Positions 32,196 to 61,476 of a stretch of 64,000 nucleotides of DNA are shown here, piece after piece. The notes under the pieces were generated by a model. That model worked only from the letters and a program-made list of their open reading frames with translations, made no database searches and was not told the DNA's origin. The stretch is from positions 248,001 through 312,000 of IMG/VR virus record IMGVR_UViG_3300042465_005589; one strand, 5' to 3'. The position numbers were made by a program, and so were the translations under genes. Every line of letters starts with the position of its first letter. The stretch's first letter is position 1.

Positions 32196-32684
32196 TTAGT
32201 AAACTAATATACATCTATCCATACGTAATGTTGTAGAAATAGTTGCTAAAGCATCTTGACTATACCCTAAAGCGTCAAAATTAACATCAGATAAGAAAGT
32301 CCCTTCTAATATCCATTTTTCCACAACAACACCTGTTGGGTCCAACATTTCAAGGTCAATATTCTTTTTATATCCCGCAGCATATCCCATACGTCCGGTA
32401 ACTGATTCAGCACATAAACGTACCCACTCCATAAGAGCTTGTGACGCTGACGGACCAATTGGGTCACGAAATTTAACGTTAATTGTACCCCATGTAAAAC
32501 GACCTGCAACATATGTTTCAGTGTTTAAAAATGGAATCGCAACAGGATTAATTGTTATATGTGGTCTTGCTGCCGATTCTACGAACCATTCATTAATTCC
32601 TAATGTTGAAGGAAAACGTAGAATAAACCTATTTTGTCTTTTAGGTTCGTAAGGTATGGGCATTTTCATTAATAAATCAGCCAT
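32196..32684 (-). CDS. Tail tube protein (gp19-like)
   Basis: EPKRQNRF, YVAGRFTWGTI, YKKNIDLEMLDPTGVVVEKWILEG. Confidence 0.88.
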   Translation of the reverse strand: MADLLMKMPIPYEPKRQNRFILRFPSTLGINEWFVESAARPHITINPVAIPFLNTETYVAGRFTWGTINVKFRDPIGPSASQALMEWVRLCAESVTGRMGYAAGYKKNIDLEMLDPTGVVVEKWILEGTFLSDVNFDALGYSQDALATISTTLRMDRCILVY

Positions 32685-33740: not shown

Positions 33741-36700
33741 TTATATATTCTCGAAAGAAGCTCCGGTTGGAGTAATATAGAACGTAATGTCTATAAATTC
33801 TAACGATTTGGTTGGTTTGATATAAATCTTACCAGTCATTTGATTTCTGTCTAAATCAGCTGCGTCAGACGAAACAGTTACACGGAAATCATAAAGACCT
33901 CTATCTCTTCTAATAGAGTCTAATATTGGGTTAACAGAATCTAAGAAATCTTGTCTTACTTTAGCATCGTTTTGTTCAAATAATAATCTAACAGAAACTG
34001 CCGATATTAATTTACGTGCTTGAAGTAATAATCTTCTTACGTTGATTCTGTCAAGAGCTGATTGTCTAACTTGAAGAGTTTTATTACCCCAAATTACAGT
34101 TCCAACATCAGAGAACGTTGCGATTGGATTTAAACGACCTTGATATAAAGTATCTCTATTCTCTTGTGTCAATTTAACTCTCGCTTTAACAGCGTTTACG
34201 ATACCTCTTGTGTAACCCGCCGCAGCGAACCAAGGAAATGCAATATTATCCGTTAACGCTAAGTTTCTTGTTACCTCAGCAGTTGCCGGTAAGTAAATCT
34301 GAGTATTGTTAACAGTATCTCTCATTAACACCCAAGGGTAATAAGTAGCGGTATAGTTAGAGTCAATACCTGAATTTGCCAAATTATCTACAGCTTCTTG
34401 TGGGTAAATAAAATCTAATTGATTACCTGTTGACGGAACATACATATTGTAGTCAGGAGTTGTACATACGTACAACGAATCCGCTCTACTATATTCAATC
34501 ATATCAATAGCACTCTCAACTAAATTAGAGTTATTAACATAATCAATACCCGGTGTTACAAACACATTGATGTTTACCGCCTCAGGATTCGCAAATGTTT
34601 GTTGACCTAATAAATAAGCGTAATAATCGGTGTTTGCCCAATCTTGAGTGTTACCAGCAACAATAATTTGTTTAAATGCTCCCCAACCTGATGCCGTAGG
34701 ATATTTGATAGTAGGACAGGAACCATTTAAATAACCTTTTCTACCTAACATAAACTCATCTTTATTTGTTCTAAATTCTCTATAGATATCCCAACCATCA
34801 AAACCACCTTTTACTAAGAATGTGAATTTACGTGCGTAAATTCTATAATAAGGGTTAAGTTCACTATCAGGGTCTGATGTAAATGGTGCGTCACCACAAA
34901 AGAATGCCGGAGTACCACTTGTTACAAATATATTTGGAATTGTAATACCACTTGCGTTTTTGTCCATGTGGAAACCTCTTGTTCTAAAATTCCAAGGATT
35001 ACCTTCAGTATCATTACAAATATCTAAAGGAAGTTGAGTTCCTTTATATTGGAAGAAATCAACATCAATACCTTCAGTATCTGAAATACCTAAATAAGTT
35101 CTTCTTACATTATCACCAGCACTTGTTGTTGAATCATCCGCTCCTGAAGCTAACCCAAACGGTGGATTATAAACTACTTCACCAGGATAATAATATTTAG
35201 ATTTAATTAATGGGAATGGTGGTCTTACACCAGCATATTCTCTATAATCGTATCCTAAGAATCCACAAGGAAGAGCATCTATTGGTGCATCCTCGTTAAT
35301 TTCAACCATAACATAACTTGACAATAAAGGATATTCTCCATCTAAACTACCAATTTTTTTACCAACAAATGAATTATCTTGAGGGTTCATACTACAATTA
35401 GTGTATTTTTCAAGAACAACAGGTGATGAATCAGTATCAAAGAAATCTCTAATTAATACATCAAAAGTACCATTGTTAAATGACATATTTGCAATTGATA
35501 TTTTAATATCAATATTTGCTGAATCACCATCTGCAATAGTTGTAAATTTAAATAAGTTATAAACTTTATTACCTCTTAATTCTGAAACAACCCACGGAGA
35601 AACCGGTGATTGGAATTTTTCTAAGTAAAAAGCTATTGATGTTGGGTCAATCGATTGACGAGCATCAGGTAAAGCTGTTAATTCACAATTTAAACCTCTA
35701 ATATAACCCATTCTCCAAGCATTCGTTAATAAAGCTTGGAATCTTTCTTCAACAAATAATGGAACTACTGTTCTTGGTTTTGAGAAGTTAGTTGAACCAA
35801 ACACTTTACTAATATATTTTGAATCTGAATTTGATAATGATGTTTCAAAGAAATATTGGTCACCATCTTTACTTGTAATATTAACACCAAAAGTTGAAAA
35901 TGGGTTCTTAGTTACACCTGAATATGTCCCGGTACAATCTAAACTAACATCCGTTAAACCCGAAACTTCATAAACAGGTCCATTTTCCAAACCATATGTT
36001 GACAATCCTCTTGAACGAAGTGTTGCAACAACTAAGTCATCATAATCTGTATATGCCGTACCCGAATAAATATAAATCACCCCAATCAATGTACCTGTAT
36101 AACAATTAACAGGTTTTGCTGTTGTTGTTGACGTAGTTGATGTTGATGTTGTTGTTGTACAAGGGTTTGTTGTTGATGTCGTCGTTGAAGTTGATGTTGT
36201 TGTTGTAATTATTGGTGTCAATGTTAATCCTGTAACAACAGACCAAAATGAAAATCCTGTATAAGAAGCATTACCAACATTATCAAATAATGAGTAATAC
36301 CAAGGGTCATTTTGAGGTGCTGAATAATTACATAAATTTGAACTTACATTATCCACTCCGTAAACATTAGTTTCACCAGTATATACTGAACTTAAACCCG
36401 AATAAACACTAGTTGGTATTGCACCATAATAATTAATTGAAGTGTCTTCTTTAGCCGGTGTTGAAACGATATCAAAAATTTGACTTGACATATCATCAAA
36501 CAATGTTGACATTGAACCATCAAATTGTTCGTAAGGTTCATACAAAATTGAAGATATTTCAGATGGTAAACTAGATGTGTTTGTAAAACTAACAGTGTTA
36601 ATACTATTAGTACACGCTGAAAATTCAACAGAATAGTTTATAGTTTTAAAGTCTATACATTCAGTAACACAATTAACTGTAGTTGCACTTTCACAAAAGA

Positions 36701-37067
36701 AATCAACCGTTGTCGGGTTAACATTCGCTTTTGTGGTGATAGACCAAGATGGTCCTGCGTCGTAACCAGATAATCCTAACACTCTTGTTACGAATAATTG
36801 GTTAGATTGTTGTAAGTATGATTTAGCAATATAAGCCGCTTCGTACTTTGGAATTTGTGTATTTATAAATTTTTCTGGAGAAGTTCCACCGAAGAAATTT
36901 GTGAATTCATCAAAATTTCGTATAAAGATAGGCTCGAAAGCGGGACCTTTTAAGGTCTCACCCACAATACCCAACGTGGTAACTCCCACACTTTGTGCTA
37001 CGAAACTTAAATCAACTTCAGAAGTATATACTCCGGGAGATACGAATACTTTTTGATTTGATGCCAT
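33741..37067 (-). CDS. Contractile tail sheath protein (gp18-like) with Thr/Cys-rich insertion
   Basis: FVSPGVYTSEVD, PWFAAAGYTRG, WGNKTLQ, LDRINVRRLL, IKPTKSLEFI. Start moved to MASNQKVF at 37067. Confidence 0.95.
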   Translation of the reverse strand: MASNQKVFVSPGVYTSEVDLSFVAQSVGVTTLGIVGETLKGPAFEPIFIRNFDEFTNFFGGTSPEKFINTQIPKYEAAYIAKSYLQQSNQLFVTRVLGLSGYDAGPSWSITTKANVNPTTVDFFCESATTVNCVTECIDFKTINYSVEFSACTNSINTVSFTNTSSLPSEISSILYEPYEQFDGSMSTLFDDMSSQIFDIVSTPAKEDTSINYYGAIPTSVYSGLSSVYTGETNVYGVDNVSSNLCNYSAPQNDPWYYSLFDNVGNASYTGFSFWSVVTGLTLTPIITTTTSTSTTTSTTNPCTTTTSTSTTSTTTAKPVNCYTGTLIGVIYIYSGTAYTDYDDLVVATLRSRGLSTYGLENGPVYEVSGLTDVSLDCTGTYSGVTKNPFSTFGVNITSKDGDQYFFETSLSNSDSKYISKVFGSTNFSKPRTVVPLFVEERFQALLTNAWRMGYIRGLNCELTALPDARQSIDPTSIAFYLEKFQSPVSPWVVSELRGNKVYNLFKFTTIADGDSANIDIKISIANMSFNNGTFDVLIRDFFDTDSSPVVLEKYTNCSMNPQDNSFVGKKIGSLDGEYPLLSSYVMVEINEDAPIDALPCGFLGYDYREYAGVRPPFPLIKSKYYYPGEVVYNPPFGLASGADDSTTSAGDNVRRTYLGISDTEGIDVDFFQYKGTQLPLDICNDTEGNPWNFRTRGFHMDKNASGITIPNIFVTSGTPAFFCGDAPFTSDPDSELNPYYRIYARKFTFLVKGGFDGWDIYREFRTNKDEFMLGRKGYLNGSCPTIKYPTASGWGAFKQIIVAGNTQDWANTDYYAYLLGQQTFANPEAVNINVFVTPGIDYVNNSNLVESAIDMIEYSRADSLYVCTTPDYNMYVPSTGNQLDFIYPQEAVDNLANSGIDSNYTATYYPWVLMRDTVNNTQIYLPATAEVTRNLALTDNIAFPWFAAAGYTRGIVNAVKARVKLTQENRDTLYQGRLNPIATFSDVGTVIWGNKTLQVRQSALDRINVRRLLLQARKLISAVSVRLLFEQNDAKVRQDFLDSVNPILDSIRRDRGLYDFRVTVSSDAADLDRNQMTGKIYIKPTKSLEFIDITFYITPTGASFENI

Positions 37068-37161
37068 TAGTTTGTCTTTTTTATTTGTAAATTTATTTTT
37101 ATTGATAAATATTATAAAAAAAACCAAAATACTTTACTTCATAAGAAGTATTTATAAATTA

Positions 37162-38390: not shown

Positions 38391-38837
38391 TTATTGTTTT
38401 GTTATAAATATTTTGTTTCTTGAATTTATCATTTCTACTTCACCGGCACGGTATATTGGTTCTTCGGTGTCTTTCATAACATAAGAATTATATTTGTAAG
38501 GGTTATAGGTTACAATATTATTATTAGGTTCACTTGGTAAATTTTCACAAGGGAACTTACAATAATCCATTAATGTTCCAATCACAAATGAATGAACATT
38601 CTTTCTTTTTTCTTTTATAACCTTTTCTCTACCTCCCGGTCTAACTCTAAATTCAACGTCAGATAATTTAACATAGTCACAATGATTAACAACTAATCCT
38701 TTATAGATAATTGAGAATGTCTGTTTATGTAAGTTATAATAAATCATAACTTTTTTACCTATGTAATCATTTTCTTCTTCATCTGAAAAATTTTCAAATA
38801 TTCTTCTATATTGATTTTCGTTAATTATAATTTTCAT
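38391..38837 (-). CDS. Hypothetical phage protein with MKIIINE leader
   Basis: Probable start MKIIINENQ at 38837; YYNLHK...KEKRKNVHSFV domain typical of phage hypotheticals. Confidence 0.65.
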   Translation of the reverse strand: MKIIINENQYRRIFENFSDEEENDYIGKKVMIYYNLHKQTFSIIYKGLVVNHCDYVKLSDVEFRVRPGGREKVIKEKRKNVHSFVIGTLMDYCKFPCENLPSEPNNNIVTYNPYKYNSYVMKDTEEPIYRAGEVEMINSRNKIFITKQ

Positions 38838-47649: not shown

Positions 47650-48495
47650 TTAATGACATGGAAGTAAATTGTTAAAATTAACTATTCCGGTAATAACAGA
47701 ATTAAACACTGAAATTATTTGATACCCATTTATTTGAGTAACATAATTACCATCGTTAATTAATGATATGGTTTGCCCATTAGGGTCACTATAAATTGTT
47801 GCACCTATTTGTAGTGGAGTGTACATATAATAATTCTCACCACCAATTATATAAAAAGGAGGGGCCAATACATAATCTTCAACAATACATTTAATTAGTT
47901 GAGGACCATCAGCAATAAAATCAATAAATAAATGACCAATATCATCATAAATACCTGAACCCATATTAACTTCAGATAATACAGGAATTGTTGTTGTTGT
48001 AGTTGTAGTATGATTAATTGTGGTAGTAGTTGTCGTACAAGGACAACATTCTGTAGTTGTTGTTGTAGTATAAGGACCATTGATACAACAAGGGAATTCT
48101 GACACATAACAACTATCGTAAACTAAATCGTCTGCAATAAACGAATCTTGTACATTTATAAATAAATCTTCCCTAATTGGTAATATAAGAACTCCATCTG
48201 AATTTCTTAACATAAATTGACCAGCGTATCTACCAACTCTATTTGTATCTCTCGGAGTAAATTGATAATATATATAATATTCAGGACCAGCATTTAAATC
48301 AACAAAAGTTTTTTCAACAAACCCCGCAGGTCTTGAACTTATTTTTGGAATACCGGTTTCTACGTCAACCATTGAGAAGAAAATGGCAGATTCTTCAATC
48401 ATATCCATAAACTTATTATAGTCACTTCTTCCGTCTTTAACTACTTGTAATTTTAATACCGGTAAGGTTGCGTTTTTCTTTATAAAAAAATCCAT
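47650..48495 (-). CDS. Putative virion appendage protein with BppU-like N-terminus and poly-Thr/Cys linker
   Basis: FFIKKNATLP...YQFTPRDT..GRYAGQF; YTTTTTTECCPCTTTTTTINHTTTTTTTIP; TATTTAT upstream. Confidence 0.55.
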   Translation of the reverse strand: MDFFIKKNATLPVLKLQVVKDGRSDYNKFMDMIEESAIFFSMVDVETGIPKISSRPAGFVEKTFVDLNAGPEYYIYYQFTPRDTNRVGRYAGQFMLRNSDGVLILPIREDLFINVQDSFIADDLVYDSCYVSEFPCCINGPYTTTTTTECCPCTTTTTTINHTTTTTTTIPVLSEVNMGSGIYDDIGHLFIDFIADGPQLIKCIVEDYVLAPPFYIIGGENYYMYTPLQIGATIYSDPNGQTISLINDGNYVTQINGYQIISVFNSVITGIVNFNNLLPCH

Positions 48496-49705: not shown

Positions 49706-50479
49706 TTATCCGGCGATATTCCATGGTTTAGTTCCATTAAGTTTCTCTTCATAATTTGAAATAAAAATTTCATTTATTTTTGAAGATAACGGACTAACAC
49801 CATTACATGTTATCCCACTATTATAACTGGCAATTGACATAGACGAGCCTTCACCGGAACCAATTGTTTCTAAATAGTTGTGACGAATATCAAACTCTTC
49901 AGTAAACACAGATAGGTCATCCCATATTTTAAAAAAATTTTCTTCAGTTCCTCTGTCTTTTTTAATAATCCATTTACCTTCCAAATAGTGTTCTATATAA
50001 TCTTCAGGATGACCTTCATGAAACACTTTTTTTAATTTAAAACCATTTTTTTCCGCAAAATCAATACCTTCTTGACCATATTTAGTATTTCTTCTACCTT
50101 GTACTTCACAAGTACTAACATCGTCTGAACAATATGTGAACCCTATATTACCAAACGTTGCAAAAATATGTAGACCAGAGTTTATATCTGATAAAAAATC
50201 AATGTTATCAGTATCTTTAATAAAGACATCAGCATCTAAAAAAACTGCAGTGTCATAGTATTTTAAACATTCTTTCATCACCACTTTTTTTTCATGAAAT
50301 GAAAAATATGGTTTAGTATATTCTATTACTGTTAACAAATTATTTGGTGTATAATGTTCCGGAGAATTAGTCATTACAAAAATATGATGTCCCATATCAT
50401 TTATTTGTTTAATTAATGAATCTCCAAATGTTACATATTTTTCACCATATGTTAATGTACAAAACGCAAAATTACTCAT
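49706..50479 (-). CDS. GT-A fold glycosyltransferase
   Basis: GEKY, VMTN, VFLDADV (DxD); probable start MSNFAF by ATGA overlap. Confidence 0.65.
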   Translation of the reverse strand: MSNFAFCTLTYGEKYVTFGDSLIKQINDMGHHIFVMTNSPEHYTPNNLLTVIEYTKPYFSFHEKKVVMKECLKYYDTAVFLDADVFIKDTDNIDFLSDINSGLHIFATFGNIGFTYCSDDVSTCEVQGRRNTKYGQEGIDFAEKNGFKLKKVFHEGHPEDYIEHYLEGKWIIKKDRGTEENFFKIWDDLSVFTEEFDIRHNYLETIGSGEGSSMSIASYNSGITCNGVSPLSSKINEIFISNYEEKLNGTKPWNIAG

Positions 50480-52206
50480 ATTTCCTCTATTAATGTCCAA
50501 TCTTTATCCCCATACCAATCATAAGTGTGGTAAATTTTAATTTTATCTTTTTTATCAAAAAATAACTCATTTGTTTTTTCACTATTAAAGTGATATACAA
50601 CATCATTAATTTTAAACTCATGGTCTAAAAACTCAACATTATTTTTTAAATTCCAATTAAAATTTAAAACAAATAGATTATCATTTAATTCAAAAATTGA
50701 ATAACTTAAATCTATCTTGTGTTCTTTAAATTGAATGTCTGATACCTTTTTTGAAATTAGTTTACCCTCACTTAATTGTACTGTTTTTCTATCAGGAAAA
50801 TTTTTAATATAATCACTAATAAACCCACCATAAAAGTTATATTTAATATCTTCACCAAGTTTATTAGATATGTTGTGTGAATTAATTTTAAGTCCGCTTT
50901 TAGCTACACATAAACCAACAATATTACCCTCACCAACACCTATTTTATCCACCCCATTAATCATTTCATGAGCATCTAAAGATGATGATAATTCTTTCCA
51001 TGTATCTAAAAAAACTTTCCATTTATTTTCTTCTTTTGAAACAATTAAAACACCTTCTTGATAGTGATAAGCATCATTTATTGGGATATTTAATTTTTCG
51101 GATATACTTAACGCTAATTCACCATAACCCACAACCCTATTAGTAATGTCTTTACTTTCAAAAAAACCTCCGGAAGGTCTTGATATTAATCCCCAATCCC
51201 AAGATGGGTGAAATCCTGGTTTAATTATTCTAATTAAATTGGTGTAACAATTTTTATAATTTTTAAAAAATAATCTACAATCAGAATCAACATATACAAC
51301 AGCATCTTCATATTTAAATCCCTCTTCAAAACAAATTAATTTATCATTATATGAGAATTTTTTATTAGGATAATCTACTAATATAACATTATCTAAAGAA
51401 TCATAGAATTCTTTTTGGTCTGTAACTATTAATATTTTTTGTTTAAAATAATTTAAATCAAAAGCCAATTTAACCGCGTTTTTATTAGCTGTTTCACCAT
51501 GAGCAATAGTTGTAAAAATATAGTTTTGTTTTTTATAGTTTTTTTTACAACTATTATTTCCTTGTATATCTGTTGTAAAATCATTTTTAACTTTTACAAT
51601 TCTTTCATTTGAAACATACACATTGAATTCAGATAATCTAATATATAATGCGGTATCAATTTGATTATCTATATTAGTAAGTTTTTCGATTAATTTTTTT
51701 GCACCATTTGGGGATATTATTAAAGATGGTAAACACGTTACAATACCTTTAGGTATAGATAAGTTTTTACTAAATGGATGTTTTTCTACATCAGTATCAC
51801 CATGACCTAAATAACAATAATCAAAATCATTAGGTAATTCAGATAAAATCATCTTTAATTTATCATCAAATGAATTATCAATTTCCACATCATCTTCAAA
51901 AGTTATTGCAGGAGAATCTAATTCTGATATTTTTTGAAATAAATTAAGATAACTCATTAAAACCCCCAAACCACCTTGAGTCATTGATAATCCCCAAGCG
52001 GTTACTGTATCCATTAAAATATCTTGGATTGCATTTTCACTTAATATACCTTCTTTTAAAGTTCTTGGATTTATAGTAGACCCATCAACTGCGTCAAACC
52101 TTTGATAAATATTTTTTAAAATAGTACTTTTATTTAATTGATTTTCTATAAATAACTTCCTATCCGTTCTTTTTTCTAAATTAATATAAAAACAATGTTT
52201 TAGCAT
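50476..52206 (-). CDS. Bifunctional glycosyltransferase: GT25 + GT-A domain + C-terminal YHTYxWYG domain
   Basis: YINLEKRTDRK, RFDAVDG, FEDD, GAKKL, QID (GT25); second domain VYVDSD. Confidence 0.8.
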   Translation of the reverse strand: MLKHCFYINLEKRTDRKLFIENQLNKSTILKNIYQRFDAVDGSTINPRTLKEGILSENAIQDILMDTVTAWGLSMTQGGLGVLMSYLNLFQKISELDSPAITFEDDVEIDNSFDDKLKMILSELPNDFDYCYLGHGDTDVEKHPFSKNLSIPKGIVTCLPSLIISPNGAKKLIEKLTNIDNQIDTALYIRLSEFNVYVSNERIVKVKNDFTTDIQGNNSCKKNYKKQNYIFTTIAHGETANKNAVKLAFDLNYFKQKILIVTDQKEFYDSLDNVILVDYPNKKFSYNDKLICFEEGFKYEDAVVYVDSDCRLFFKNYKNCYTNLIRIIKPGFHPSWDWGLISRPSGGFFESKDITNRVVGYGELALSISEKLNIPINDAYHYQEGVLIVSKEENKWKVFLDTWKELSSSLDAHEMINGVDKIGVGEGNIVGLCVAKSGLKINSHNISNKLGEDIKYNFYGGFISDYIKNFPDRKTVQLSEGKLISKKVSDIQFKEHKIDLSYSIFELNDNLFVLNFNWNLKNNVEFLDHEFKINDVVYHFNSEKTNELFFDKKDKIKIYHTYDWYGDKDWTLIEEI

Positions 52207-52212
52207 ACTTTA

Positions 52213-53460
52213 TTATAAATTACCGGTTATTCTATCACGCCAACCTTTTGACGTACTATATGGCCATACAACCCAATATTTTGGTTTTGATGTTGTTTGG
52301 AAATCTCTCCAAACTTTACAATATCCGTCATGGTCTTTCATCATAGCATTTATCTCATTAATATCGGCATCTTTTCTATAAAGAGTTTCATCATTTTCAT
52401 TATGAAATGCTACAACCCAAAATTCATAATCTTTTTCCGGTACTTGTTTAAATGAGATATCGATACAATGTTTGAAAATACTCGCAAAACTTGATAACCA
52501 TTCTTCTTCCGTCTCATATATGGTAGGGTTTGGTGCGTATTTTTTATCTAAAGTATATTGTTGGACAGCTCTATTTGAAAATTTAAGACCTGAATAAATT
52601 TCATAATCTTTTAATGTTCTTTCAGTTCCAAATCCATACTTACTAAAATCCATAGTAACTTCTTCACCGTCCATTCCAAAAAGCTGTCTATTCTTTTTGT
52701 GAGATAACTCATTCTTTTTACCCCACTCTTTATCATCATCCCATTGTTTGGTTCTACCCTTACGAGTATATTCGTGCCAAATAACGGTCTTATGTGGGTG
52801 GAATAAATCATATCCGTGAGTGAATGCTCTAACAGCAATTGATATTTCTTCCCCGTGAAAATAAAATTCAGGGTCGTGTTGAACCTCCACACTAAATTGA
52901 CCTAATGTGAATGCCATGTGAGCAGAATAAAAACGAGAAGTGATTGGTTGTTTTAATTTTTCCCAACCAGGTATTGTTTCAGGTAAGAAGAATACCGCAC
53001 CTTCAGGAATGAATCTATCAAAAGACATTCTCCACGGCTCTTTAACTCTACCTGCCGGGTCATTCTCGGGGTCAAATGATGAAACATACCCCGTTAACAA
53101 AGGTTTCTTAAATCCTTTCTTTTGAAGTTGTTTAATCATTTTGATTAAGGTAGTATCCCAATCTTTTTCAAATCTCATATGAGAATCTATTTGAAGTGTA
53201 TACTCCTCACCATCATATAATTGTTGTACTTGATTTCTTGCCCAACAAACACCTTTAGCGTCGGAATACAAAACATCCTTAACTCTAAATCGTTTATCTT
53301 TTTTAAATTTTTCTAAATTATCAAACCCATCTTCAGGGTGATATTGACGACATATACCTATTCTTAAGTTTTTAGGTCTTTTAGCATTTTCAATCATGCT
53401 ATCAAGTGTCGGGATAAGCTGGGGGTCACGATAGGAGGCTATCTGTACAAATATTTTCAT
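52213..53460 (-). CDS. GT60-like polypeptide alpha-GlcNAc transferase (Gnt1/OGNT family)
   Basis: IFVQIASYRD, GVCWAR, LQIDSHMRFEKDWD, FHGEE..IAVRAFTHGYD, WHEY, YGFGTERTL..Y. Confidence 0.85.
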   Translation of the reverse strand: MKIFVQIASYRDPQLIPTLDSMIENAKRPKNLRIGICRQYHPEDGFDNLEKFKKDKRFRVKDVLYSDAKGVCWARNQVQQLYDGEEYTLQIDSHMRFEKDWDTTLIKMIKQLQKKGFKKPLLTGYVSSFDPENDPAGRVKEPWRMSFDRFIPEGAVFFLPETIPGWEKLKQPITSRFYSAHMAFTLGQFSVEVQHDPEFYFHGEEISIAVRAFTHGYDLFHPHKTVIWHEYTRKGRTKQWDDDKEWGKKNELSHKKNRQLFGMDGEEVTMDFSKYGFGTERTLKDYEIYSGLKFSNRAVQQYTLDKKYAPNPTIYETEEEWLSSFASIFKHCIDISFKQVPEKDYEFWVVAFHNENDETLYRKDADINEINAMMKDHDGYCKVWRDFQTTSKPKYWVVWPYSTSKGWRDRITGNL

Positions 53461-53599: not shown

Positions 53600-55528
53600 T
53601 TAGTTTATAAAAGAAAGAAATTTTTTATTACTACTACTGTAAAGTACCCAAGAAGCACCATAGTTAGAAGATATTTGAGTTTGAAACGCAATTGTAGTTC
53701 CAAGCATATATTGTCCAGAATTAGATATATCTGTTTTGATAATAGAACTACCAAAAGTATTCGTAGTCCAACTAACACCAAAATTATTTGTGGTAATAAC
53801 TCTATTATTAGTAGCACCTACTATTCCATATCTTCCATCATAACTTAACTTAAGGTCTTCATTAAAATCTTGACTAACAATACTCATTATTGACCAAGTT
53901 GCACCAAAATCAGTACTTCTGTAACTATTTCCAACTGCTGAAACTAACATCATATATAATCCATTTCCTGATACTGCAACACCTTGAAAATTACTAGAAT
54001 TTGCGGCTGATTGCGAAGGAAAAATATTTAATGTTATATTTGTAAAAGTTATTCCATAATTTGTAGATAGTAAAACATATTTTAATGAACTTGAATCATA
54101 ACCTGCAATAATAACATATTGACCATCCCACGATACACTAGATTGGATAATTAATGTAAAAGCCACAGGAAATGATGCAGGACTCCAACTTGTTCCAAAA
54201 TCACCACTTCTTAAAAGAGTGCCTCCTGATTCAACATACATATATTGTCCATTTTTAGATATTGAAGTCTCCCCAATAAAACCAGAACCCACCCCAATAG
54301 GTGTTGAGTAAGAATTACCATAATCTGAAGATATCTTTACTTGTAAAGGAGAAGTTGCTCCTGCAGCCGCTATAGAGTATTGGTAATTATCGGAAGCATT
54401 TATTCCATAATTTGTAGTGACGCCAACAGACGTTAGTTGACTTATTTCAACAAGTGTATCATCATATATTCTAAAAAATGGAGATGAATTAGATGTACCT
54501 AACATATCCCCTACTCCAAAAACAGGTGTAGGTATTGATGTTGGAGTAGGTGTTGGAGTCGCAGTTGAGGTTGGTGTTGCCGTTGGTGTAGGTGTAGATG
54601 TCGGAGTAGATGTCGGAGTTGATGTTGGCGTCGCAGTCGGTGTTGGTGTGGATGTCGGAGTAGATGTTGGTGTTGATGTTGGTGTTGCCGTTGGAGTTGA
54701 TGTTGGAGTCGCAGTTGGTGTAGGTGTAGGTGTTGGAGTCGCAGTTGGTGTTGCCGTTGGTGTAGGTGTTGGTGTAGGTGTAGGACAAGGATTTAAAATT
54801 TGACAAGTATTAATATCCGGTTGACTATTTAATAAAATGTATGAATACTGATTCGTTGAGGTTATTGGTGATATTGATGTTACACAACCAACATATCCAC
54901 TACTTTGAACATAATAAACCCCTGACAATGGAGAATAAGATGTAGGAATATTATAAACTATAAAAGTGTTTGATGGGTTACAACTATCTTGGAAATACCC
55001 CACAATAGGTGCTAATGTTTGTGTTGGAGTAGTTGTTGGTGTTGCAGTAGGTACTGGTGCACAAGTATTATCAACACACACCTCATTAATCAGAATGTTT
55101 ACCCCCACATCAGCAGAAGGTAATCTACCGCAATAATATAAGGTAGTCCCTGATTGAATAACACTGTTTAACACAACGTTATTACATTGGGTTAAACTAA
55201 AGTTTAAAGTTCCCGAAGTTGTATTTTCAAATGATATACAATTACAAACAACAACCATTGTTGGAGTCGGAGTTGGTGTTGTTGTTGGAGTTGGTGTTGG
55301 TGGTAATGGACAACTTTCTAATAAAAATTCTTCACACCCTATTGAATCAGTCACAACAACTAAAACCTGACTAGCACCTTCTAATTGAGAAGGGATTGGA
55401 AGTTCTAATGTTGGAGGAACAGAAACAACACCGGTTGCAACCACATAACAATACGTTAATGTTAAATCACATATTGATATATCAAATGGTGAGTGTCCGT
55501 TTAAACTGGTTATTTCTATTACTTGCAT
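53600..55528 (-). CDS. Mucin-like Pro-Thr repeat protein with Cys-rich modules and C-terminal Asp-box (BNR) beta-propeller; putative fibre/adhesin
   Basis: Three PT tracts and six SxDxGxxW-type boxes. Probable start MQVIEITS at 55528 after TATTTAT. Confidence 0.75.
54525..54785 (-). repeat. Coding low-complexity repeat (TPT[P/A/S])n, about 85 aa
   Basis: Degenerate 12-nt units such as gttggtgtaggt and gtcggagtagat. Confidence 0.9.
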
Positions 55529-55632
55529 TACAATAAATATAGTTAGAATTATTTTACCATAAATACTTAACAATATTAAAGTTTACTATGGAACTTTATT
55601 AGTAATTTATTATTTTTATAATAAAAAAAAAT

Positions 55633-58600
55633 ATGTCGTTAAAGATTAACCATTACGATTTTATTGAAATTGGTACGTCAGATTTTGATACTTTAATTGA
55701 AACCTCCAATGACAATACTGTCGGTATTAGTATTGAACCTATAAAATATTACATAAATAGATTACCTGATAAACAGAATATTATTAAAGTCCAAGCGGCA
55801 TTATCAACAACAGATGGTGAAGTCGATGTGTACTATATTGAAGATTCTAAAATAGAAGAGAATAACTTACCTTGGTGGGTTAGAGGAAGTAACTCAATAA
55901 ATAATCCTCACCCTTTTGCTATTAAAGAATTAGGTGAAGAATTATACAATAGTTTGGTAACTATTGAAAAAGTTCCAACAATTAGTTGGGAAACATTAAT
56001 TAAAAGATATGATGTTGGTTCAATCGGTTATCTAAAGATTGATACTGAAGGTCACGACCATATCATCTTCAGAGATTTTTTAAACTATTGTAAAGAACAT
56101 TCATTTCCAATCCCAAACAAAATAACACTAGAATATCACGATGGTGTGTCAAACAAAGTTGAGATTGATAAATTAATATCGGAATTACCTGAATATCAAA
56201 TTATCAAACACATTAGTGATATTACATTAATGAAACCTCTAATACCGAGAGTAATACATCAAACATATAAAACTAATGATTTACCAACAGAAATAAGTGA
56301 GGTAGTTCAAAGGTTAAAAGATATGAATCCAACTTTTGAGTATAAATTCTACAACGATAACGATTGTGTTGAATTTATTAAAGAAAATTATGATGAAGAA
56401 ACTCTTAATCTTTATTTAAGTATTAACCCAAATTATGGGTCGGCTAAATCTGATTTTTTTAGATACCTTTTAATGTATAAAGTTGGTGGTGTTTATTTGG
56501 ATATTAAAAGTTGTACTACTAAACCTTTGGAAGAAGTTTTATTACCAACCGATGAATATCTATTAACTCATTGGGAAGGATTGGATTGGGCAGATGAATT
56601 AAAATATTATTTTGGCGAATTTCAAAATTGGCATATTATCTGTAAACCAAATCACCCATTTTTAAAAAGGGTAATTGAAATTGTTAAAGACAATATTAAA
56701 AATTATATTGGTGGGTCGGATAAATATTCTGTGTTAAGATTGACAGGTCCAATCGCTTATAGTAAAGGAATTATTGAACTTATATCTCAACATAAGAAAA
56801 ATAGTGTTGATTCACCCGTTAGAGAATTTTTATTAGAAAACGAGATTGGGTTACAATATATGTCAACCACAATACATCATCATAATCTAATTGATAGTTC
56901 GTATTCAAAAAGAGAACCTTTAATTTTAAAAGATAAGGTTGAGAAATCATATCTATTATATGCAACCGAAAACTATTTGGATGTTGCAAAGATGTGTATT
57001 AAATCAATCCGAGAATATAGTGATTTACCAATTTTCTTATATCTTATTAATTCTAATAAAGTTGTGGATATTAAAGATGTTGCAACCATAAATTGGAATG
57101 TAGAATTAGTTGATGATAATTCTGATAGATACATTCAAGAGGGTGACAATTTTTACATTAATAGAACCAATAAAACGATTTATAACATCTTAATACAAAA
57201 ACCATTAATCACTAAAGACGTTTTATCTAAATACACTAAAACGGTTGCATTTATTGATTGTGATTCAATTGCAACACCATATGTTGATAGAATCTTTGAC
57301 TTATACGATAATGATAAAGATTACCCTTATTTTGTTGAAGGGATTTATGATTTTCTACACGTAGGTGAACGAGGTGGTGCTATGACTAGAGATGATATGT
57401 CAACCACGTTGGAACATCCGGCGTGTGAATTATTTAATGTTAATCAGTATGTTAGAGAAAAATACCGACAAACAGGTTATTATGTTGCAAATGAAAAATG
57501 TATTGATTTTTTATACGAATGGTATCAAATGTGTTCTCACCCTGAAGTATTAAATAATATACCATATTATGCGGCATATAATGAGGAGACCATCCTAAAT
57601 GTGTTATTGTGGAAAAAATTAATATTTGATGGATTACCTTACATTTACGCTAACGGAAATTTAGAATTGATTGATAATATCTATTCAAACTACAATATTA
57701 GTGAAGAAAGTTTATGGATTAAGATTCCAAATAAGAAAGATGATTTGTTATTTATTCACGGAGAAAAGAACATTTTAGAAATGGGTAAAATAATATCAAA
57801 AATTAAAAACCATAATAAAGAAAAAATTAAAGTATTATTCTTGGCACCACATCTGTCAACCGGAGGGATGCCATCATTCCTATTAAAACGAATCGAATCG
57901 TTATTAGAATATTATAAAGATAAAACGGAATTATTTGTTGTGGAATATTCTAACCATAGTGACCACTATGTGGTTCAAAAAAATAGAATTAAAAAATTAA
58001 TACCTCCATCACATTTTTGGACGTTAGGTGAAGATAAAAACGAATTAAAGAAAATTATTGAGGAAAATTATTTTGACATAATTCACTTGGATGAAATGAT
58101 TGAAGATTTTGATGCTCATAATAAATTATCAAATGAGTTAATGAATTTCATTTATAAAAATGACCGAACTTGGAGAGTAGTGGAAACTTGTCATAACGTT
58201 GTATTCCAACCGGAAAAAGATAAAGTGTTTCATCCTGAAGCATACGCTTATTGTTCACCATTTCATAAAGAATCAACATTCTTGAATATGCCATCGTATG
58301 GTGAAGTAATTGAATTTCCGTATAACCCTACAATTGTAATAGATAAAGAAAGTAATAAAGAAAAATTAGGTTTAGACCCAAATAAAATTCACATTATAAA
58401 TGTTGGATTATGGACACCAGGTAAAAATCAAGAAGAAGGTGTTGAGATTGCAAAATTAGTTGAGGGTATTCACCCTGAATTAGAATTCCATTTCATTGGG
58501 AATCAAGCACCTAACTTTCAAGATTATTGGATACCAATTATGAAAGATTTACCATCAAACGTTAAAGTATGGGGGGAGAAAGATAATGTTAGTGATTTTA

Positions 58601-59976
58601 TGTGTGCCGCTGATGTATTGATGTTTAACTCAACTTGGGAATGTAATCCGTTAGTATTAAGAGAAGGTATTTCTTATGGATTAAAAATTTTAGCAAGAAA
58701 CTTACCTCAATATATGGATATGTTTACACCTTATATAACACAATTGTCAGGTGATATTTTTGACATGAAAAATCAACTTTTAGATTTAATTAAAGATGAA
58801 AGTTATTACGAATTCCCAACATATAGAACAAAAGAATTTGCTGAAAAAAATTACGAGTTATACCAAAAAATATTAAACGAACCAATTAAAAAACAAACCA
58901 TGATAGATAATGAAGTACAAATATTCCAACATTTTGTTAAAGAACCATTTTTAGAAATAAAAGGAACTGGAGACAAAGATTACAATGTTAAATTCTTTGA
59001 TGAAGAAGGTATTTGTCATTATGAGAATACCATAAAACCAAATCATTGGGTTAAATTAAATAGAAGTTATTACACCAAATGGAGAGCAGTTGTTACTCGA
59101 GATAATGAGGTAATTTATGATAACACTATGGATTTAACAAATAAAAGAGTTTACATATCTTTCGATAGTAAATCTTTAGGTGACTCGATTGCTTGGATTC
59201 CTTATGTTTTAGAATTTAAAAAGAAACACGATTGTAAAGTTATTGTATCTACATTTTGGAATCATTTATTTGAAAATGAATATCCTGAAATTGAGTTTGT
59301 TGTACCGGGAACGACCGTACATAATCTTTATGCTATGTACACAATCGGATGGTTCTACAATACAGATAAAGAACCTGTATTACCAAACACAATACCATTA
59401 CAACAAACAATTACTAACATATTAGGATTAGAATTTAAAGAGATTAAACCTAATATACACAACACCATTCACCCAAGACCTTATCAAAAGAAATATGTTA
59501 CCATAGCAACTAACTCAACAGCAGGGTGTAAATTTTGGACAAGAGAAGGATGGCAATCACTAATTAACTATCTTCATAATTTAGGATATAAAGTAATAAA
59601 CGTATCCAAAGAAGATAATCCGTTTGAAAATGCAAACAAGATTAAAAACACCTCAATTCATCACACAATGAATGTAATTCACCATAGCGAATTCTTTATC
59701 GGATTATCTAGTGGTTTATCTTGGTTAGCTTGGGCGTTAGGTAAACAAGTTGTAATGATTTCTAACTTTACAAATGAGGAACATGAGTTTATGTTTAATT
59801 GTACTAGAATTGTAAATCATTCTGTTTGTAACGGATGTTGGAATAAACCTGAATTTACCTTTGATAAAGGTGATTGGAATTGGTGTCCTGTTAATAAAGG
59901 AACTGAAAAACAATTTGAATGTCATAAATCGATAACACCGGAAATGGTTATTAATCAAATACAACATTTACTATAA
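55633..59976 (+). CDS. Five-domain enzyme: FkbM methyltransferase + GT32 + GT-A + GT4 + AAH/TibC-like heptosyltransferase
   Basis: FIEIG/LKIDTEGHD; IPRVIHQT/SDFFRY/GGVYLDIK/LTGP; FIDCD; HLSTGG/KNQ/ECNPLVLREG; SLGDSIAW/FIGLSSGLSWLAWA/CNGCW..C..C. Confidence 0.85.
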   Translation: MSLKINHYDFIEIGTSDFDTLIETSNDNTVGISIEPIKYYINRLPDKQNIIKVQAALSTTDGEVDVYYIEDSKIEENNLPWWVRGSNSINNPHPFAIKELGEELYNSLVTIEKVPTISWETLIKRYDVGSIGYLKIDTEGHDHIIFRDFLNYCKEHSFPIPNKITLEYHDGVSNKVEIDKLISELPEYQIIKHISDITLMKPLIPRVIHQTYKTNDLPTEISEVVQRLKDMNPTFEYKFYNDNDCVEFIKENYDEETLNLYLSINPNYGSAKSDFFRYLLMYKVGGVYLDIKSCTTKPLEEVLLPTDEYLLTHWEGLDWADELKYYFGEFQNWHIICKPNHPFLKRVIEIVKDNIKNYIGGSDKYSVLRLTGPIAYSKGIIELISQHKKNSVDSPVREFLLENEIGLQYMSTTIHHHNLIDSSYSKREPLILKDKVEKSYLLYATENYLDVAKMCIKSIREYSDLPIFLYLINSNKVVDIKDVATINWNVELVDDNSDRYIQEGDNFYINRTNKTIYNILIQKPLITKDVLSKYTKTVAFIDCDSIATPYVDRIFDLYDNDKDYPYFVEGIYDFLHVGERGGAMTRDDMSTTLEHPACELFNVNQYVREKYRQTGYYVANEKCIDFLYEWYQMCSHPEVLNNIPYYAAYNEETILNVLLWKKLIFDGLPYIYANGNLELIDNIYSNYNISEESLWIKIPNKKDDLLFIHGEKNILEMGKIISKIKNHNKEKIKVLFLAPHLSTGGMPSFLLKRIESLLEYYKDKTELFVVEYSNHSDHYVVQKNRIKKLIPPSHFWTLGEDKNELKKIIEENYFDIIHLDEMIEDFDAHNKLSNELMNFIYKNDRTWRVVETCHNVVFQPEKDKVFHPEAYAYCSPFHKESTFLNMPSYGEVIEFPYNPTIVIDKESNKEKLGLDPNKIHIINVGLWTPGKNQEEGVEIAKLVEGIHPELEFHFIGNQAPNFQDYWIPIMKDLPSNVKVWGEKDNVSDFMCAADVLMFNSTWECNPLVLREGISYGLKILARNLPQYMDMFTPYITQLSGDIFDMKNQLLDLIKDESYYEFPTYRTKEFAEKNYELYQKILNEPIKKQTMIDNEVQIFQHFVKEPFLEIKGTGDKDYNVKFFDEEGICHYENTIKPNHWVKLNRSYYTKWRAVVTRDNEVIYDNTMDLTNKRVYISFDSKSLGDSIAWIPYVLEFKKKHDCKVIVSTFWNHLFENEYPEIEFVVPGTTVHNLYAMYTIGWFYNTDKEPVLPNTIPLQQTITNILGLEFKEIKPNIHNTIHPRPYQKKYVTIATNSTAGCKFWTREGWQSLINYLHNLGYKVINVSKEDNPFENANKIKNTSIHHTMNVIHHSEFFIGLSSGLSWLAWALGKQVVMISNFTNEEHEFMFNCTRIVNHSVCNGCWNKPEFTFDKGDWNWCPVNKGTEKQFECHKSITPEMVINQIQHLL

Positions 59977-60653
59977 TGGATTATAATAATTTTGATTGGG
60001 GATGGATGGGACAAAGTGAAGAAGGTTTGTTTCATAAAGAACAAATAACTCAAGAAACATTTGTTGATAAAATATATGAAAAGTTTTTTGAAGTTTCTGA
60101 AGGTGATATTGTTTTAGATTTTGGTGCTAGTGTTGGACCATTTACGTATAGTATTTTATCAAAAAAACCAAAACACGTATATTGTCTTGAACCAAGTGAA
60201 TTTGAATTTCCCACATTAGTTAATAATACAGTTGGTCATCCGGTAACACCAATATTGAAGGGTGTCTCAAATACCAACACATATACTGAGGGTAATGACA
60301 TTTATGGTGGTTCAAAACAAATGGAAGGAATTACTTTTAAAAAACTTTGTGAGTTATATAATTTAAAAACCATAGATTTTTTAAAAACAGATTGTGAGGG
60401 TGGTGAATACGATATTTTTAATGATGAGAATTTTGAATTTATTAAAAATAATGTCAAAAAAATCACCGGTGAGTGGCATTTAGGTACACCAATTTTAAAA
60501 GAAAAATTTAAAAAATTCAGAGATACTTACTTACAATACTTTATAAATGTTGAGGTGTACTCAATAGATGGTGTTAATGTAAAATGGAATTTAATGTCTG
60601 ACAATTTTTTAGAACACTATACAGAAATAATAATACACATATATAACGTTTAA
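59976..60653 (+). CDS. FkbM-family methyltransferase
   Basis: VLDFGASVG, CLEP, IDFLKTDCEGGEY, GEWH. Confidence 0.88.
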   Translation: MDYNNFDWGWMGQSEEGLFHKEQITQETFVDKIYEKFFEVSEGDIVLDFGASVGPFTYSILSKKPKHVYCLEPSEFEFPTLVNNTVGHPVTPILKGVSNTNTYTEGNDIYGGSKQMEGITFKKLCELYNLKTIDFLKTDCEGGEYDIFNDENFEFIKNNVKKITGEWHLGTPILKEKFKKFRDTYLQYFINVEVYSIDGVNVKWNLMSDNFLEHYTEIIIHIYNV

Positions 60654-60657
60654 TTAA

Positions 60658-61476
60658 ATGAAACAAATATTTTTTAACTCTTCCCTACCTAGAAGTGGAA
60701 GTACATTAATTCAGAATTTATTAGCTCAAAATCCTGAAATTTACTCAACACCAACATCAGGGTTGGTAGATTTTGTAATCGCTTGTAAAAACAATTACAA
60801 TCACTCACAAGCATTCCAAGCTCAAAATCAAGATGAAATGACCAAAGCCTTTGTCGATTTTTGTCAAGATGGTATGCAAGGTTATTTTAAAAGACTTACT
60901 GATAAACCAATCGTAATCGATAAAAGTCGAGAATGGGGAATCAATTATGGTTTATTGGAAATGCTACAACCAAACCCAAAAATTATTTGTATGGTTAGAG
61001 ATGTTAGAGCTGTCTATAGTTCAATGGAAAAGAATTTTAGAAAAAACCCTCATAGAGAAAATGGGATTCAAAGACCGGCAGAATTAATTGGGACAACCTT
61101 AAACAAACGTGTTGATATTTGGGCTAGTGGTGTTCCTGTTGGTGTTGCAATTGATAGGTTATTAGATACCATTCAACAAGGTATTGCCGAAAAAATGTTA
61201 TTTATTCGTTACGAGGATTTAATGAGTAATCCTGAAGAAGAAATGAGTAGAATATACAATTATTTAGAACTACCATATTATGAAGGACATGACTTTGAGA
61301 ATATATCTCAACTAACTCATGAAGATGATAGAGTACATGGGATATTTGGTGACCACCAATTAAGACCTAAATTTGAAAGAAAACCGGATGATTACATGGA
61401 AGTGTTGGGGTATGAGATATCAATGAACATTAAAAATCATTATAAATGGTTTTATGACTATTTTGGATACGTATAA
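60658..61476 (+). CDS. PAPS-dependent sulfotransferase
   Basis: 5'-PSB SLPRSGSTL, DKS, 3'-PB MVRDVRAVYSS, RYEDL. Confidence 0.9.
   Translation: MKQIFFNSSLPRSGSTLIQNLLAQNPEIYSTPTSGLVDFVIACKNNYNHSQAFQAQNQDEMTKAFVDFCQDGMQGYFKRLTDKPIVIDKSREWGINYGLLEMLQPNPKIICMVRDVRAVYSSMEKNFRKNPHRENGIQRPAELIGTTLNKRVDIWASGVPVGVAIDRLLDTIQQGIAEKMLFIRYEDLMSNPEEEMSRIYNYLELPYYEGHDFENISQLTHEDDRVHGIFGDHQLRPKFERKPDDYMEVLGYEISMNIKNHYKWFYDYFGYV

What the first reader, a model, noticed from the sequence alone, without database searches (positions are those of the whole stretch)
36110..36215. Mucin-like Thr/Ser tract inserted in the tail sheath
ITTTTSTSTTTSTTNPCTTTTSTSTTSTTTAKP sits in a Cys-containing insertion of a 1108 aa sheath. 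The PCTTTT motif recurs in the 47650 protein, and PCPTPT in the PT protein. With many sheath copies per tail, glycosylation here would form a brush along the whole tail.
Basis: partly seen in the sequence, partly recalled or inferred. Interest (0 to 1): 0.65.

Follow-up and report, generated by a model that had tools for sequence, protein, structure and literature searches.

The report
Threonine-rich exposed loop on phage sheath
Each tail-sheath subunit of an abundant lake jumbo phage carries a short, floppy, threonine/serine-rich loop on its outer side, and the phage encodes the type of enzyme that sugar-coats such tracts in eukaryotes, so a sugar-coated tail is plausible but unproven.

Summary
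Residues 287-319 of a 1108-aa T4-type tail sheath (window 36111-36209, minus strand) form a tract with 26 Thr/Ser in 29 residues. It has two 13-residue arms around an N-P-C motif.

It is not a plain insertion. It lies in the clade-specific outer part of the sheath, between two strands of a PAS-like domain. Related phages carry a ~95-aa folded module at this same site. The low-complexity form arose or was transferred at least 4 times. The anchor points (N/D-P-C, then 16-19 residues, then Cys) never change, while the arms drift between poly-Thr, Pro-Thr repeats and poly-Pro.

The phage has a conserved soluble GT60 polypeptide GlcNAc-transferase homologue and an Aah/TibC-type protein heptosyltransferase domain. 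GT60-positive jumbo phages carry 10-15 proteins with Thr/Pro-rich tracts; three GT60-negative ones carry 0-1. The cultured GT60-positive phage XacN1 has stainable virion glycoproteins.

Two results weaken the specific link. Relatives without the sheath tract keep GT60, and poly-Thr tracts occur in phages without GT60.

Verdict: an exposed mucin-like loop, probably (about 0.5) O-glycosylated. It is a new variant of known phage virion glycosylation.

The parts
33741..37067 (-). Tail sheath gene, 1108 aa (T4 gp18 type)
   Evidence: Residues 790-1107 align to gp18 325-653. The N-terminal 100 aa are conserved with the Mel-JY01 sheath.
34713..36761 (-). Outer region of the sheath (about residues 103-785) that replaces gp18 domains I/II. 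It holds ten invariant Cys.
   Evidence: Only residues 103-489 were shown to lack a counterpart in the nearest isolate's sheath (Mel-JY01). The extension to residue 785 is inferred from where the T4 gp18 alignment begins.
36057..36689 (-). PAS-like alpha/beta decoration domain (about residues 127-337). The tract interrupts it between strands 268-289 and 318-338.
   Evidence: AlphaFold2 model, pLDDT 80-90 outside the tract. VIA-align gives Z about 5 to PAS domains and Z 6.3 to sheath 9ezm. These matches are weak.
36168..36206 (-). Arm 1: residues 288-300, 10 Thr and 3 Ser. In 'long-form' relatives a ~95-aa beta module occupies this site.
36159..36167 (-). N-P-C motif (residues 301-303). It is (N/D)-P-C in 79 of the 80 aligned sequences (S-P-C in one, L078); P302 and C303 are invariant.
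36102..36158 (-). Arm 2 plus the closing Cys: residues 304-322. There are 16-19 residues between the two invariant Cys in all relatives.
52213..53460 (-). GT60-family glycosyltransferase, 415 aa. It is soluble, has an invariant D-S-H motif, and has an extra C-terminal beta domain.
53600..55573 (-). Pro-Thr repeat protein next to GT60. It has Cys-rich modules, a ~100-aa (TP)n tract and Asp-box-like repeats. It is the likeliest main acceptor.
   Evidence: A homologue lies next to GT60 in G022, and one is also present in G049.
47650..48495 (-). 281-aa protein with a conserved ~140-aa N-terminal domain, a Cys/poly-Thr linker and a variable C-terminal module.
   Evidence: The same N-terminal domain heads 3709-aa and 1416-aa TP-tract proteins in G049.
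50476..52206 (-). GT25-domain protein, 576 aa. It is an accessory part of the island.
   Evidence: It is absent from G013, G018, G022 and G049.
55633..59976 (+). 1447-aa fusion enzyme: FkbM methyltransferase, a DXD sugar-binding glycosyltransferase region, GT4, and an Aah/TibC-type protein O-heptosyltransferase domain (aa 1115-1445).
   Evidence: TIGR04414, 282.6 bits, cut-off 200. It is present in 5 of 14 relatives' fragments.
59976..61476 (+). FkbM methyltransferase (59976-60653) and sulfotransferase (60658-61476).

Best explanation
The tract is a solvent-exposed, extended low-complexity loop on the outward-facing decoration part of each sheath subunit. It has two Thr/Ser arms pinned by an invariant N/D-P-C motif and a second invariant Cys 16-19 residues later.

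Most likely, the phage's own soluble GT60-type enzyme O-glycosylates these arms in the host cytoplasm. The enzyme would add a first GlcNAc to Thr/Ser from UDP-GlcNAc. Other enzymes of the island (GT25, GT4, methyltransferases, sulfotransferase) may then extend or decorate the sugar. Every sheath subunit would then carry a small mucin-like tuft.

Shown: the anatomy, the conservation, the outer location by homology, the presence and conservation of the enzymes, and the co-occurrence of GT60 with Thr/Pro-rich tracts across whole proteomes.

Inferred: that GT60 acts on this loop, what the glycan is, and what the coat does. Protection of an exposed linker from proteases, or reduced unspecific sticking, are guesses.
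For: (1) GT60 membership is solid. PF11397 scores 242.8 bits against a cut-off of 21. D92-S93-H94 is invariant in 22 homologues. The model has a GT-A fold, and its widest-coverage structural matches are the mucin-type ppGalNAc-transferases. There is no signal peptide or membrane segment.

(2) A characterised enzyme of this type (the T. cruzi transferase encoded by TcOGNT-2) puts GlcNAc on Thr of mucins and accepts a peptide with eight Thr flanked by K-P-P (PMC3769586).

(3) The island also holds a second GT domain of a protein-directed family, an Aah/TibC equivalog. The genome's only thymidylate-synthase homologue is a canonical ThyA, so there is no sign of a glycosylated-DNA pathway.

(4) Among ORFs of 200 aa or more, those with Thr-rich T/S/P tracts number 10 (this phage), 11 (G049) and 15 (XacN1) in GT60-positive genomes. 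They number 0, 0 and 1 in GT60-negative Mel-JY01, Flavobacterium phage immuto and RaK2.

(5) GT60 lies directly beside a Thr-tract gene in this clade. In an unrelated 69-kb contig the two are 1.5 kb apart.

(6) XacN1 has a 48.6%-identical GT60 homologue, and its virions show at least two Schiff-stained glycoprotein bands.

(7) The loop is predicted disordered (pLDDT below 50). It sits in the region that replaces the outer gp18 domains.

(8) The low-complexity form appears at least 4 times on the sheath tree, always in a GT60 background.
Against: There is no direct evidence of any sugar on this protein.

Long-form relatives have no low-complexity arms yet keep GT60 at about 76% identity. Eight of 15 such records are positive, including both complete genomes. 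The sheath loop is therefore not the substrate that keeps GT60 under selection.

Poly-Thr tracts are common in viral contigs: 50 of 80 pattern hits are in frame. Only 1 of 14 searchable carriers has GT60, and 3 near-complete carriers have none.

In some relatives the arms are mostly Pro, with few acceptor sites.

One 98-kb fragment (G018) keeps a Pro-Thr loop but has other genes at the GT60 site.

The proteome comparison rests on only 3 positive genomes (2 independent lineages) against 3 negatives.

The glycoproteins of XacN1 were not identified, and its 718-aa sheath has no such tract.
Confidence: 0.5

Rival explanations
1. The tract is an unmodified spacer. When the ~95-aa module at this site was lost, a 13-17-residue extended hydrophilic linker was needed to bridge the same two anchor points. 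Thr, Ser and Pro are simply what such linkers drift to. The glycosylation island serves other proteins, such as the Pro-Thr protein, the giant modular proteins or the collagen-like proteins.
For: Arm length and anchor points are fixed while composition drifts freely, down to poly-Pro. The long form is ancestral by parsimony, and the module sits exactly where arm 1 is. GT60 is retained without the tract. Poly-Thr and Pro-rich linkers are widespread in phages without GT60.
Against: Arm 2 keeps its length in both forms, yet it also turns Thr/Pro-rich whenever arm 1 does. A soluble Thr-directed GT made in the same cytoplasm would have to ignore the densest Thr/Ser run in the genome. Tracts of this kind are nearly absent from three GT60-negative large myoviruses.
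Confidence: 0.33
2. The Cys residues are the functional part. C303 and C322 close an 18-residue disulfide loop, or link to one of the other eight invariant Cys or to a neighbouring subunit. This would stabilise the outer layer of the sheath outside the cell. The Thr arms would be incidental filler.
For: P302, C303 and C322 are invariant in 80 sequences of this set and were recovered in most of the long-form sequences. The C-to-C spacing is 16-19 residues. The outer region holds ten invariant Cys, an even number.
Against: AlphaFold2 places the N-P-C motif with low confidence (pLDDT about 40), so no partner can be named. This reading does not explain why both arms become Thr-rich. It is also compatible with glycosylation rather than exclusive of it.
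Confidence: 0.1
3. The GT island does not act on virion proteins at all. It would instead modify phage DNA or host envelope glycans, and the Thr tracts would be unrelated to it.
For: Many phage glycosyltransferases modify DNA or host O-antigen (as noted in PMC12619734 and PMC5852040). GT25, GT4 and GT9-like domains are typical of lipopolysaccharide pathways.
Against: The two best-assigned enzymes belong to protein-directed families, GT60 and the Aah/TibC equivalog. ThyA is canonical, so no hydroxymethyl-pyrimidine route was seen. XacN1 virions contain glycoproteins.
Confidence: 0.07

Closest known systems
Mycobacteriophage virion glycosylation (Freeman et al. 2023, as summarised in PMC12619734)
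   Same: Phage-encoded glycosyltransferases decorate abundant virion subunits, so the whole particle carries a glycan coat.
   Different: In mycobacteriophages the glycans sit on the C-termini of capsid and tail-tube subunits. Here the candidate site is an internal loop of the sheath, the initiating enzyme is GT60, and nothing has been measured. I could not read the original paper.
Mucin-type O-GlcNAc initiation by polypeptide alpha-GlcNAc-transferases of Trypanosoma cruzi and Dictyostelium, which I take to be CAZy GT60 (PMC3769586)
   Same: The enzyme family is the same by Pfam (PF11397). The acceptors are Thr runs flanked by Pro/Lys, very like the arms and their A-K-P end.
   Different: Those enzymes are Golgi membrane proteins of eukaryotes. 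The phage enzyme is soluble, would act in a bacterial cytoplasm, and carries an extra C-terminal beta domain.
Xanthomonas jumbo phage XacN1 (PMC5852040)
   Same: It has a GT60 homologue (ORF334, 48.6% identity) near the DNA polymerase, a GT9 gene, many Thr/Pro tracts in large proteins, and Schiff-positive virion proteins.
   Different: Its 718-aa sheath has no such tract, and the stained proteins were not identified. It is only distantly related (the sheath matches over 163 residues).
Pro/Thr linkers of secreted modular enzymes such as Cellulomonas cellulases (own knowledge)
   Same: They are extended low-complexity Thr/Pro spacers between folded, often disulfide-bonded, modules. Some are O-glycosylated, which protects them from proteases.
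   Different: Those linkers join separate domains of secreted proteins. This one is a loop that leaves and re-enters one domain of a virion protein made in the cytoplasm.
Outer decoration domains of contractile sheaths (T4 gp18 domains I/II, phiKZ gp29, phi-kp24)
   Same: Variable domains are inserted after about residue 100 of a conserved sheath core and face outward (gp18 domain layout from own knowledge).
   Different: The outer part here is about 680 residues, Cys-rich, and carries a low-complexity loop. I know of no such loop in solved sheaths.
Aah/TibC autotransporter heptosyltransferases
   Same: There is an equivalog-level match for a cytoplasmic protein O-glycosyltransferase.
   Different: Here it is fused to three other enzyme domains in a phage. 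Its acceptor is unknown, and it is an accessory present in only some relatives.

Membership tests
T4-type contractile tail sheath (gp18; Pfam Phage_sheath_1 / 1C) | The C-terminal sheath domains match the family models and solved gp18. | tested here: met
   PF17482 scores 37.7 bits (cut-off 26.9). PHROG 23 gives E 1.6e-54. gp18 residues 325-653 match at E 3e-33. PF04984 is below its cut-off (26.5 against 31.4).
T4-type contractile tail sheath (gp18; Pfam Phage_sheath_1 / 1C) | The gene lies in a tail module next to tube and baseplate genes. | tested here: inconclusive
   The gp19-like tube at 32196-32684 scores 22.2 bits, below its cut-off of 28.2. T4_baseplate at 31326-32081 scores 36.1 bits, above its cut-off.
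GT60 polypeptide GlcNAc-transferase (Pfam PF11397) | The sequence matches the family model above the curated cut-off. | tested here: met
   242.8 bits against a cut-off of 21. The family was also found in 14 of 24 records of the first sheath set, one more in truncated form, and 8 of 15 long-form records.
GT60 polypeptide GlcNAc-transferase (Pfam PF11397) | GT-A fold with a metal-binding D-x-H/D motif. | tested here: met
   D92-S93-H94 is invariant in 22 homologues. The model's N-terminal half has pLDDT 85-95. Foldseek hits are GT-A enzymes, including GalNAc-T2, T4 and T12.
GT60 polypeptide GlcNAc-transferase (Pfam PF11397) | The enzyme transfers GlcNAc from UDP-GlcNAc to Thr, Ser or Hyp of a polypeptide. 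| not testable with these tools
   This needs an enzyme assay. The complex prediction gave no verdict.
Mucin-like O-glycosylated tract | Dense Thr/Ser (with or without Pro) of low complexity, predicted unstructured and exposed. | tested here: met
   26 of 29 residues are Thr/Ser. pLDDT is below 50 for residues 290-315. The outer location follows from homology.
Mucin-like O-glycosylated tract | Glycans are actually attached. | not testable with these tools
   No proteomic or glycan data exist for this uncultured phage.
Mucin-like O-glycosylated tract | Presence of the tract co-varies with presence of the initiating transferase. | tested here: inconclusive
   At the sheath site there is no co-variation. 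At proteome level there is a clear contrast but with few genomes. Poly-Thr without GT60 exists.
Mycobacteriophage-type virion glycosylation | Glycans are on the C-terminal ends of capsid and tail-tube subunits. | tested here: not met
   The candidate site is an internal loop of the sheath.
Aah/TibC protein O-heptosyltransferase (TIGR04414) | Equivalog model match above the cut-off. | tested here: met
   282.6 bits against a cut-off of 200, over aa 1115-1445 of the 1447-aa protein.

The most novel reading that the evidence does not exclude
A very abundant group of lake jumbo phages, and distantly the XacN1-like phages, runs a eukaryote-like mucin-type O-glycosylation pathway inside bacterial cells. 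A soluble GT60 enzyme starts glycans on Thr/Pro-rich tracts of many virion proteins, and lineage-specific enzymes extend, methylate and sulfate them. The sheath has repeatedly traded a folded decoration module for a glycosylated Thr loop, giving a sugar-coated tail.
Probability: 0.3. Interest if true: 0.8.

Novelty: new variant of a known kind. Interest (0 to 1): 0.6.

Why it matters
Phage virion glycosylation is known from a few cases only, and there it changes how particles are recognised.

This candidate system is different. Its initiating enzyme belongs to a family otherwise characterised in protists, and many Thr-rich acceptor tracts are spread over the virion proteins.

The phage group is very common in lakes. 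The sheath stretch occurs in 20 lake-water runs from 20 studies. More than 7,500 GT60 homologues were found, and the best 120 are 82-94% identical.

The idea can be tested now, because four cultured jumbo phages carry the GT60 homologue: XacN1, Xoo-sp13, CM1 and RAS14. One of them already shows unidentified virion glycoproteins.

If true, this would be, as far as I know, the first mucin-type protein glycosylation described in a bacterial virus. It would also explain why Thr/Pro tracts pile up in these proteomes.

Tried and rejected
Complex prediction of GT60 with sheath residues 276-330 gave no verdict (score 0.01). It counts neither for nor against binding.

The full-length sheath fold has mean pLDDT 50. 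The conserved N- and C-terminal core was not modelled (the alignment is shallow). Only residues 104-289 and 318-470 are usable, and no coordinates were available for measuring exposure. The fold matches are weak (Z at most 6.3).

phmmer of GT60 against PDB sequences returned only chance T7 RNA polymerase hits.

PHROG and Pfam scans of the other tract-bearing proteins found almost nothing. I could not show that they are virion proteins.

I looked for a natural 'GT60-minus' relative. Eight of the ten negative fragments simply end before the GT60 site. One of the others holds a truncated GT60 at its end, and one (G018) truly lacks it at that site but is only 34% complete.

The P-C-Thr motif as a signature was rejected. 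Cys within 8 residues of poly-Thr occurs in 19 of 58 cases against about 26% expected, whereas Pro is truly enriched (16% against 4.8%).

The contingency-locus or slippage idea was rejected. Codons are mixed, and contigs from other lakes show no length change.

The Freeman 2023 paper could not be read.

Whether this phage is a 'moraphage' (PMC12619734) could not be decided.

No alternative genetic code was used.
Full report
**What is there.** The window is part of a 318,164-bp virus record with 31% G+C, judged complete. The minus-strand ORF at 33741-37127 encodes a tail sheath. From the ATG at 37067 it is 1108 aa, and it starts with the N-terminus conserved in all relatives. The assignment rests on Pfam, PHROG and PDB matches. 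Residues 790-1107 align with T4 gp18 residues 325-653 at E 3e-33.

It has two arms of 10 Thr and 3 Ser each around N-P-C, then A-K-P-V-N-C. Thr and Ser each make up about 7% of the long open frames, so this is not chance. The related motifs in the 47650 and 53600 proteins are also real.

**Where it sits.** The nearest isolated phage sheath (Microcystis phage Mel-JY01, 812 aa) aligns only with residues 3-102 and 490-1105. T4 gp18 aligns only from residue 790 onward. About 680 residues therefore stand in the place of gp18 domains I and II, which are the outward-facing domains of that sheath (domain layout from my own knowledge).

The AlphaFold2 model is poor overall (mean pLDDT 50) but confident for residues 104-289 and 318-470. 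The tract (290-315) falls below 50 and lies between two long strands, 268-289 and 318-338. Structure search matched residues 98-470 weakly to the outer domains of solved sheaths (Z 6.3) and residues 140-335 to PAS-like folds (Z about 5). The tract is thus a loop that leaves and re-enters one decoration domain. It is not an inter-domain linker.

**Conservation.** A scan of IMG/VR returned the maximum of 600 matching stretches, of which 599 encode a relative. I read 79 sheath sequences at 62-96% identity.
- All have the loop at the same place, with P302-C303 and C322 invariant and N or D (S in one sequence) at position 301.
- There are 16-19 residues between the two Cys.
- The arms drift between poly-Thr, Pro-Thr repeats and poly-Pro.
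- Thr codons are mixed.
- Contigs from other lakes are identical through the tract, with no length change.

Selection therefore acts on length, anchor points and general character, not on sequence, and DNA slippage is not the driver.

A second set of relatives has sheaths of about 1190-1210 aa. They carry an ordered ~95-residue beta module exactly where arm 1 sits, and a Gly/Asn/Ser/Thr-rich arm 2 of the same 18 residues. On a tree of 126 unique sheaths rooted with Mel-JY01, the long and short forms are interleaved. Parsimony puts the long form at the root and needs at least four changes to the short, low-complexity form. The short-form clades have 24 tips (including this phage), 35, 2 and 1, with supports of 0.99-1.0. 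This is a gene tree, and recombination could mimic repeated origin.

**The enzymes.** Fifteen kilobases upstream lies a 415-aa protein that matches Pfam PF11397 (GT60) at 242.8 bits against a cut-off of 21. It begins directly with the first strand of the fold and has no signal or membrane segment. D-S-H is invariant. Its model has a GT-A fold, and the widest structural matches are human polypeptide GalNAc-transferases. The T. cruzi enzyme of this type puts alpha-GlcNAc on Thr of mucins and accepts a peptide with eight Thr flanked by K-P-P (PMC3769586).

Around GT60 lie:
- a Pro-Thr repeat protein and a GT25 protein;
- a 1447-aa fusion enzyme whose last domain is an equivalog of the Aah/TibC protein O-heptosyltransferases (282.6 bits, cut-off 200);
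- an FkbM methyltransferase and a sulfotransferase.

The genome's thymidylate synthase homologue is canonical, so I saw no route to glycosylated DNA. Among relatives GT60 is the constant element and the other enzymes come and go.

At the sheath itself the test fails.
- GT60 is present in 14 of the 24 largest fragments from the first sheath scan, which are short-form apart from L080's record, plus one more cut by a contig end. Eight of the other nine end before the site.
- GT60 is equally present in long-form relatives that lack the tract. Eight of 15 records have it, including both complete genomes.
- Conversely, a pattern scan for ten Thr codons found in-frame poly-Thr in 50 of 80 viral loci. 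Of 14 carriers that could be searched, only one has GT60, and three near-complete genomes have none.

At the level of whole proteomes the picture is different. ORFs of 200 aa or more with Thr-rich T/S/P tracts number 10, 11 and 15 in three GT60-positive jumbo phages (this one, G049 and XacN1). They number 0, 0 and 1 in three GT60-negative large myoviruses, among them RaK2, a relative of XacN1.

The single poly-Thr carrier with GT60 is an unrelated contig of 45% G+C. There the two genes lie 1.5 kb apart. Only 4 of 50,697 isolated phage records have a GT60 homologue, and all four are jumbo phages. For one of them, XacN1, the authors stained at least two virion glycoproteins and suggested that the phage's own transferases make them (PMC5852040).

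**Reading.** GT60 and Thr/Pro-rich tracts go together in these phages, and the protein next to GT60 is the most obvious acceptor. The sheath loop is a later recruit. It is an exposed, disordered run with the highest Thr/Ser density in the genome, made in the same cytoplasm as a soluble Thr-directed transferase.

I rate glycosylation of this loop at about 0.5. The main rival (0.33) is a bare spacer left after loss of the module. A role centred on the invariant Cys (0.1) does not exclude either reading. A role of the island outside virion proteins rates 0.07.

**Novelty.** The held literature has no paper that treats a GT60-family enzyme in a bacteriophage, and none on a glycosylated sheath. A 2025 paper on large aquatic phages notes glycosyltransferases as core genes but mentions neither threonine nor mucin. 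I file the finding as a new variant of phage virion glycosylation. It is unproven, but testable in cultured relatives.

**Limits.**
- No coordinates of the models were available.
- The comparison uses few genomes.
- The complex prediction gave no verdict.
- Read laying was given 901 bases.

Noticed in passing
G000:C1:2-2800 (-) and G000:C1:312220-318162 (-), outside the window: Collagen-like G-X-Y repeat ORFs (Gly-Thr-Ser / Gly-Ser-Ser triplets) run off both ends of the 318-kb record on the same strand. They may be one gene split by the record's ends. As I recall, GT25, the family of a protein in the island, includes collagen galactosyltransferases.
   Followed up: no
window 52213-52500 (-), GT60 residues about 320-415: The GT60 protein has an extra beta-rich C-terminal domain (pLDDT 75-89) outside the Pfam model. 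Its position recalls the lectin domain of mucin-type GalNAc-transferases, but I did not test it.
   Followed up: no
window 53600-55573 (-): The Pro-Thr protein has small Cys-rich modules joined by Pro-Thr linkers and a ~100-residue Thr-Pro repeat. Its C-terminal half has about six S-x-(D/N)-x-G-x-(S/T)-W motifs that look like Asp-box propeller blades.
   Followed up: partly
window 47650-48495 (-); G049 189376-200502 and 200570-204817: The ~140-aa N-terminal domain of the 47650 protein is conserved while everything after it varies. Relatives have nothing after it, a short Thr tail, or a 527-aa form. In G049 it heads proteins of 3709 and 1416 aa full of Thr-Pro linkers. This resembles an anchor domain for exchangeable fibre modules.
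   Followed up: partly
window 34713-36761 (-): Ten Cys are invariant across 80 sheaths (positions 133, 137, 152, 303, 322, 558, 601, 684 and 784, and nearly so at 125). All lie in the outer region, which suggests disulfides or metal sites in a protein made in the cytoplasm.
   Followed up: no
window 38391-38888 (-): A 165-aa protein matches the Mycobacterium phage L5 gp82 family (PF25735, E 4.8e-30). It sits just upstream of the sheath module.
   Followed up: no
L128:1-5600 (record G018): One relative has other genes where GT60 normally lies upstream of the DNA polymerase. They include a 734-aa ORF of Asn-rich pentapeptide-like repeats.
   Followed up: partly
window 36103-36164: In four lake metagenomes the contig depth rises five- to twenty-fold in two of the runs (two- to five-fold in the others) over the ACA-rich codons, because other organisms' sequences map there at 85% likeness. 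Poly-Thr-coding repeats are common in lake communities. Some assemblers also break contigs here.
   Followed up: partly
G000:C1:127243-128529 (-), outside the window: The thymidylate synthase is 428 aa and has inserted segments relative to the 264-318-position family models, yet it keeps the canonical catalytic motifs.
   Followed up: no
loci L132-L211 (viral contigs): In-frame runs of ten or more Thr occur in many unrelated viral contigs, and Pro is strongly enriched beside them (16% against 4.8%). Poly-Thr/Pro linkers look like a general, undescribed feature of environmental phage proteins.
   Followed up: partly
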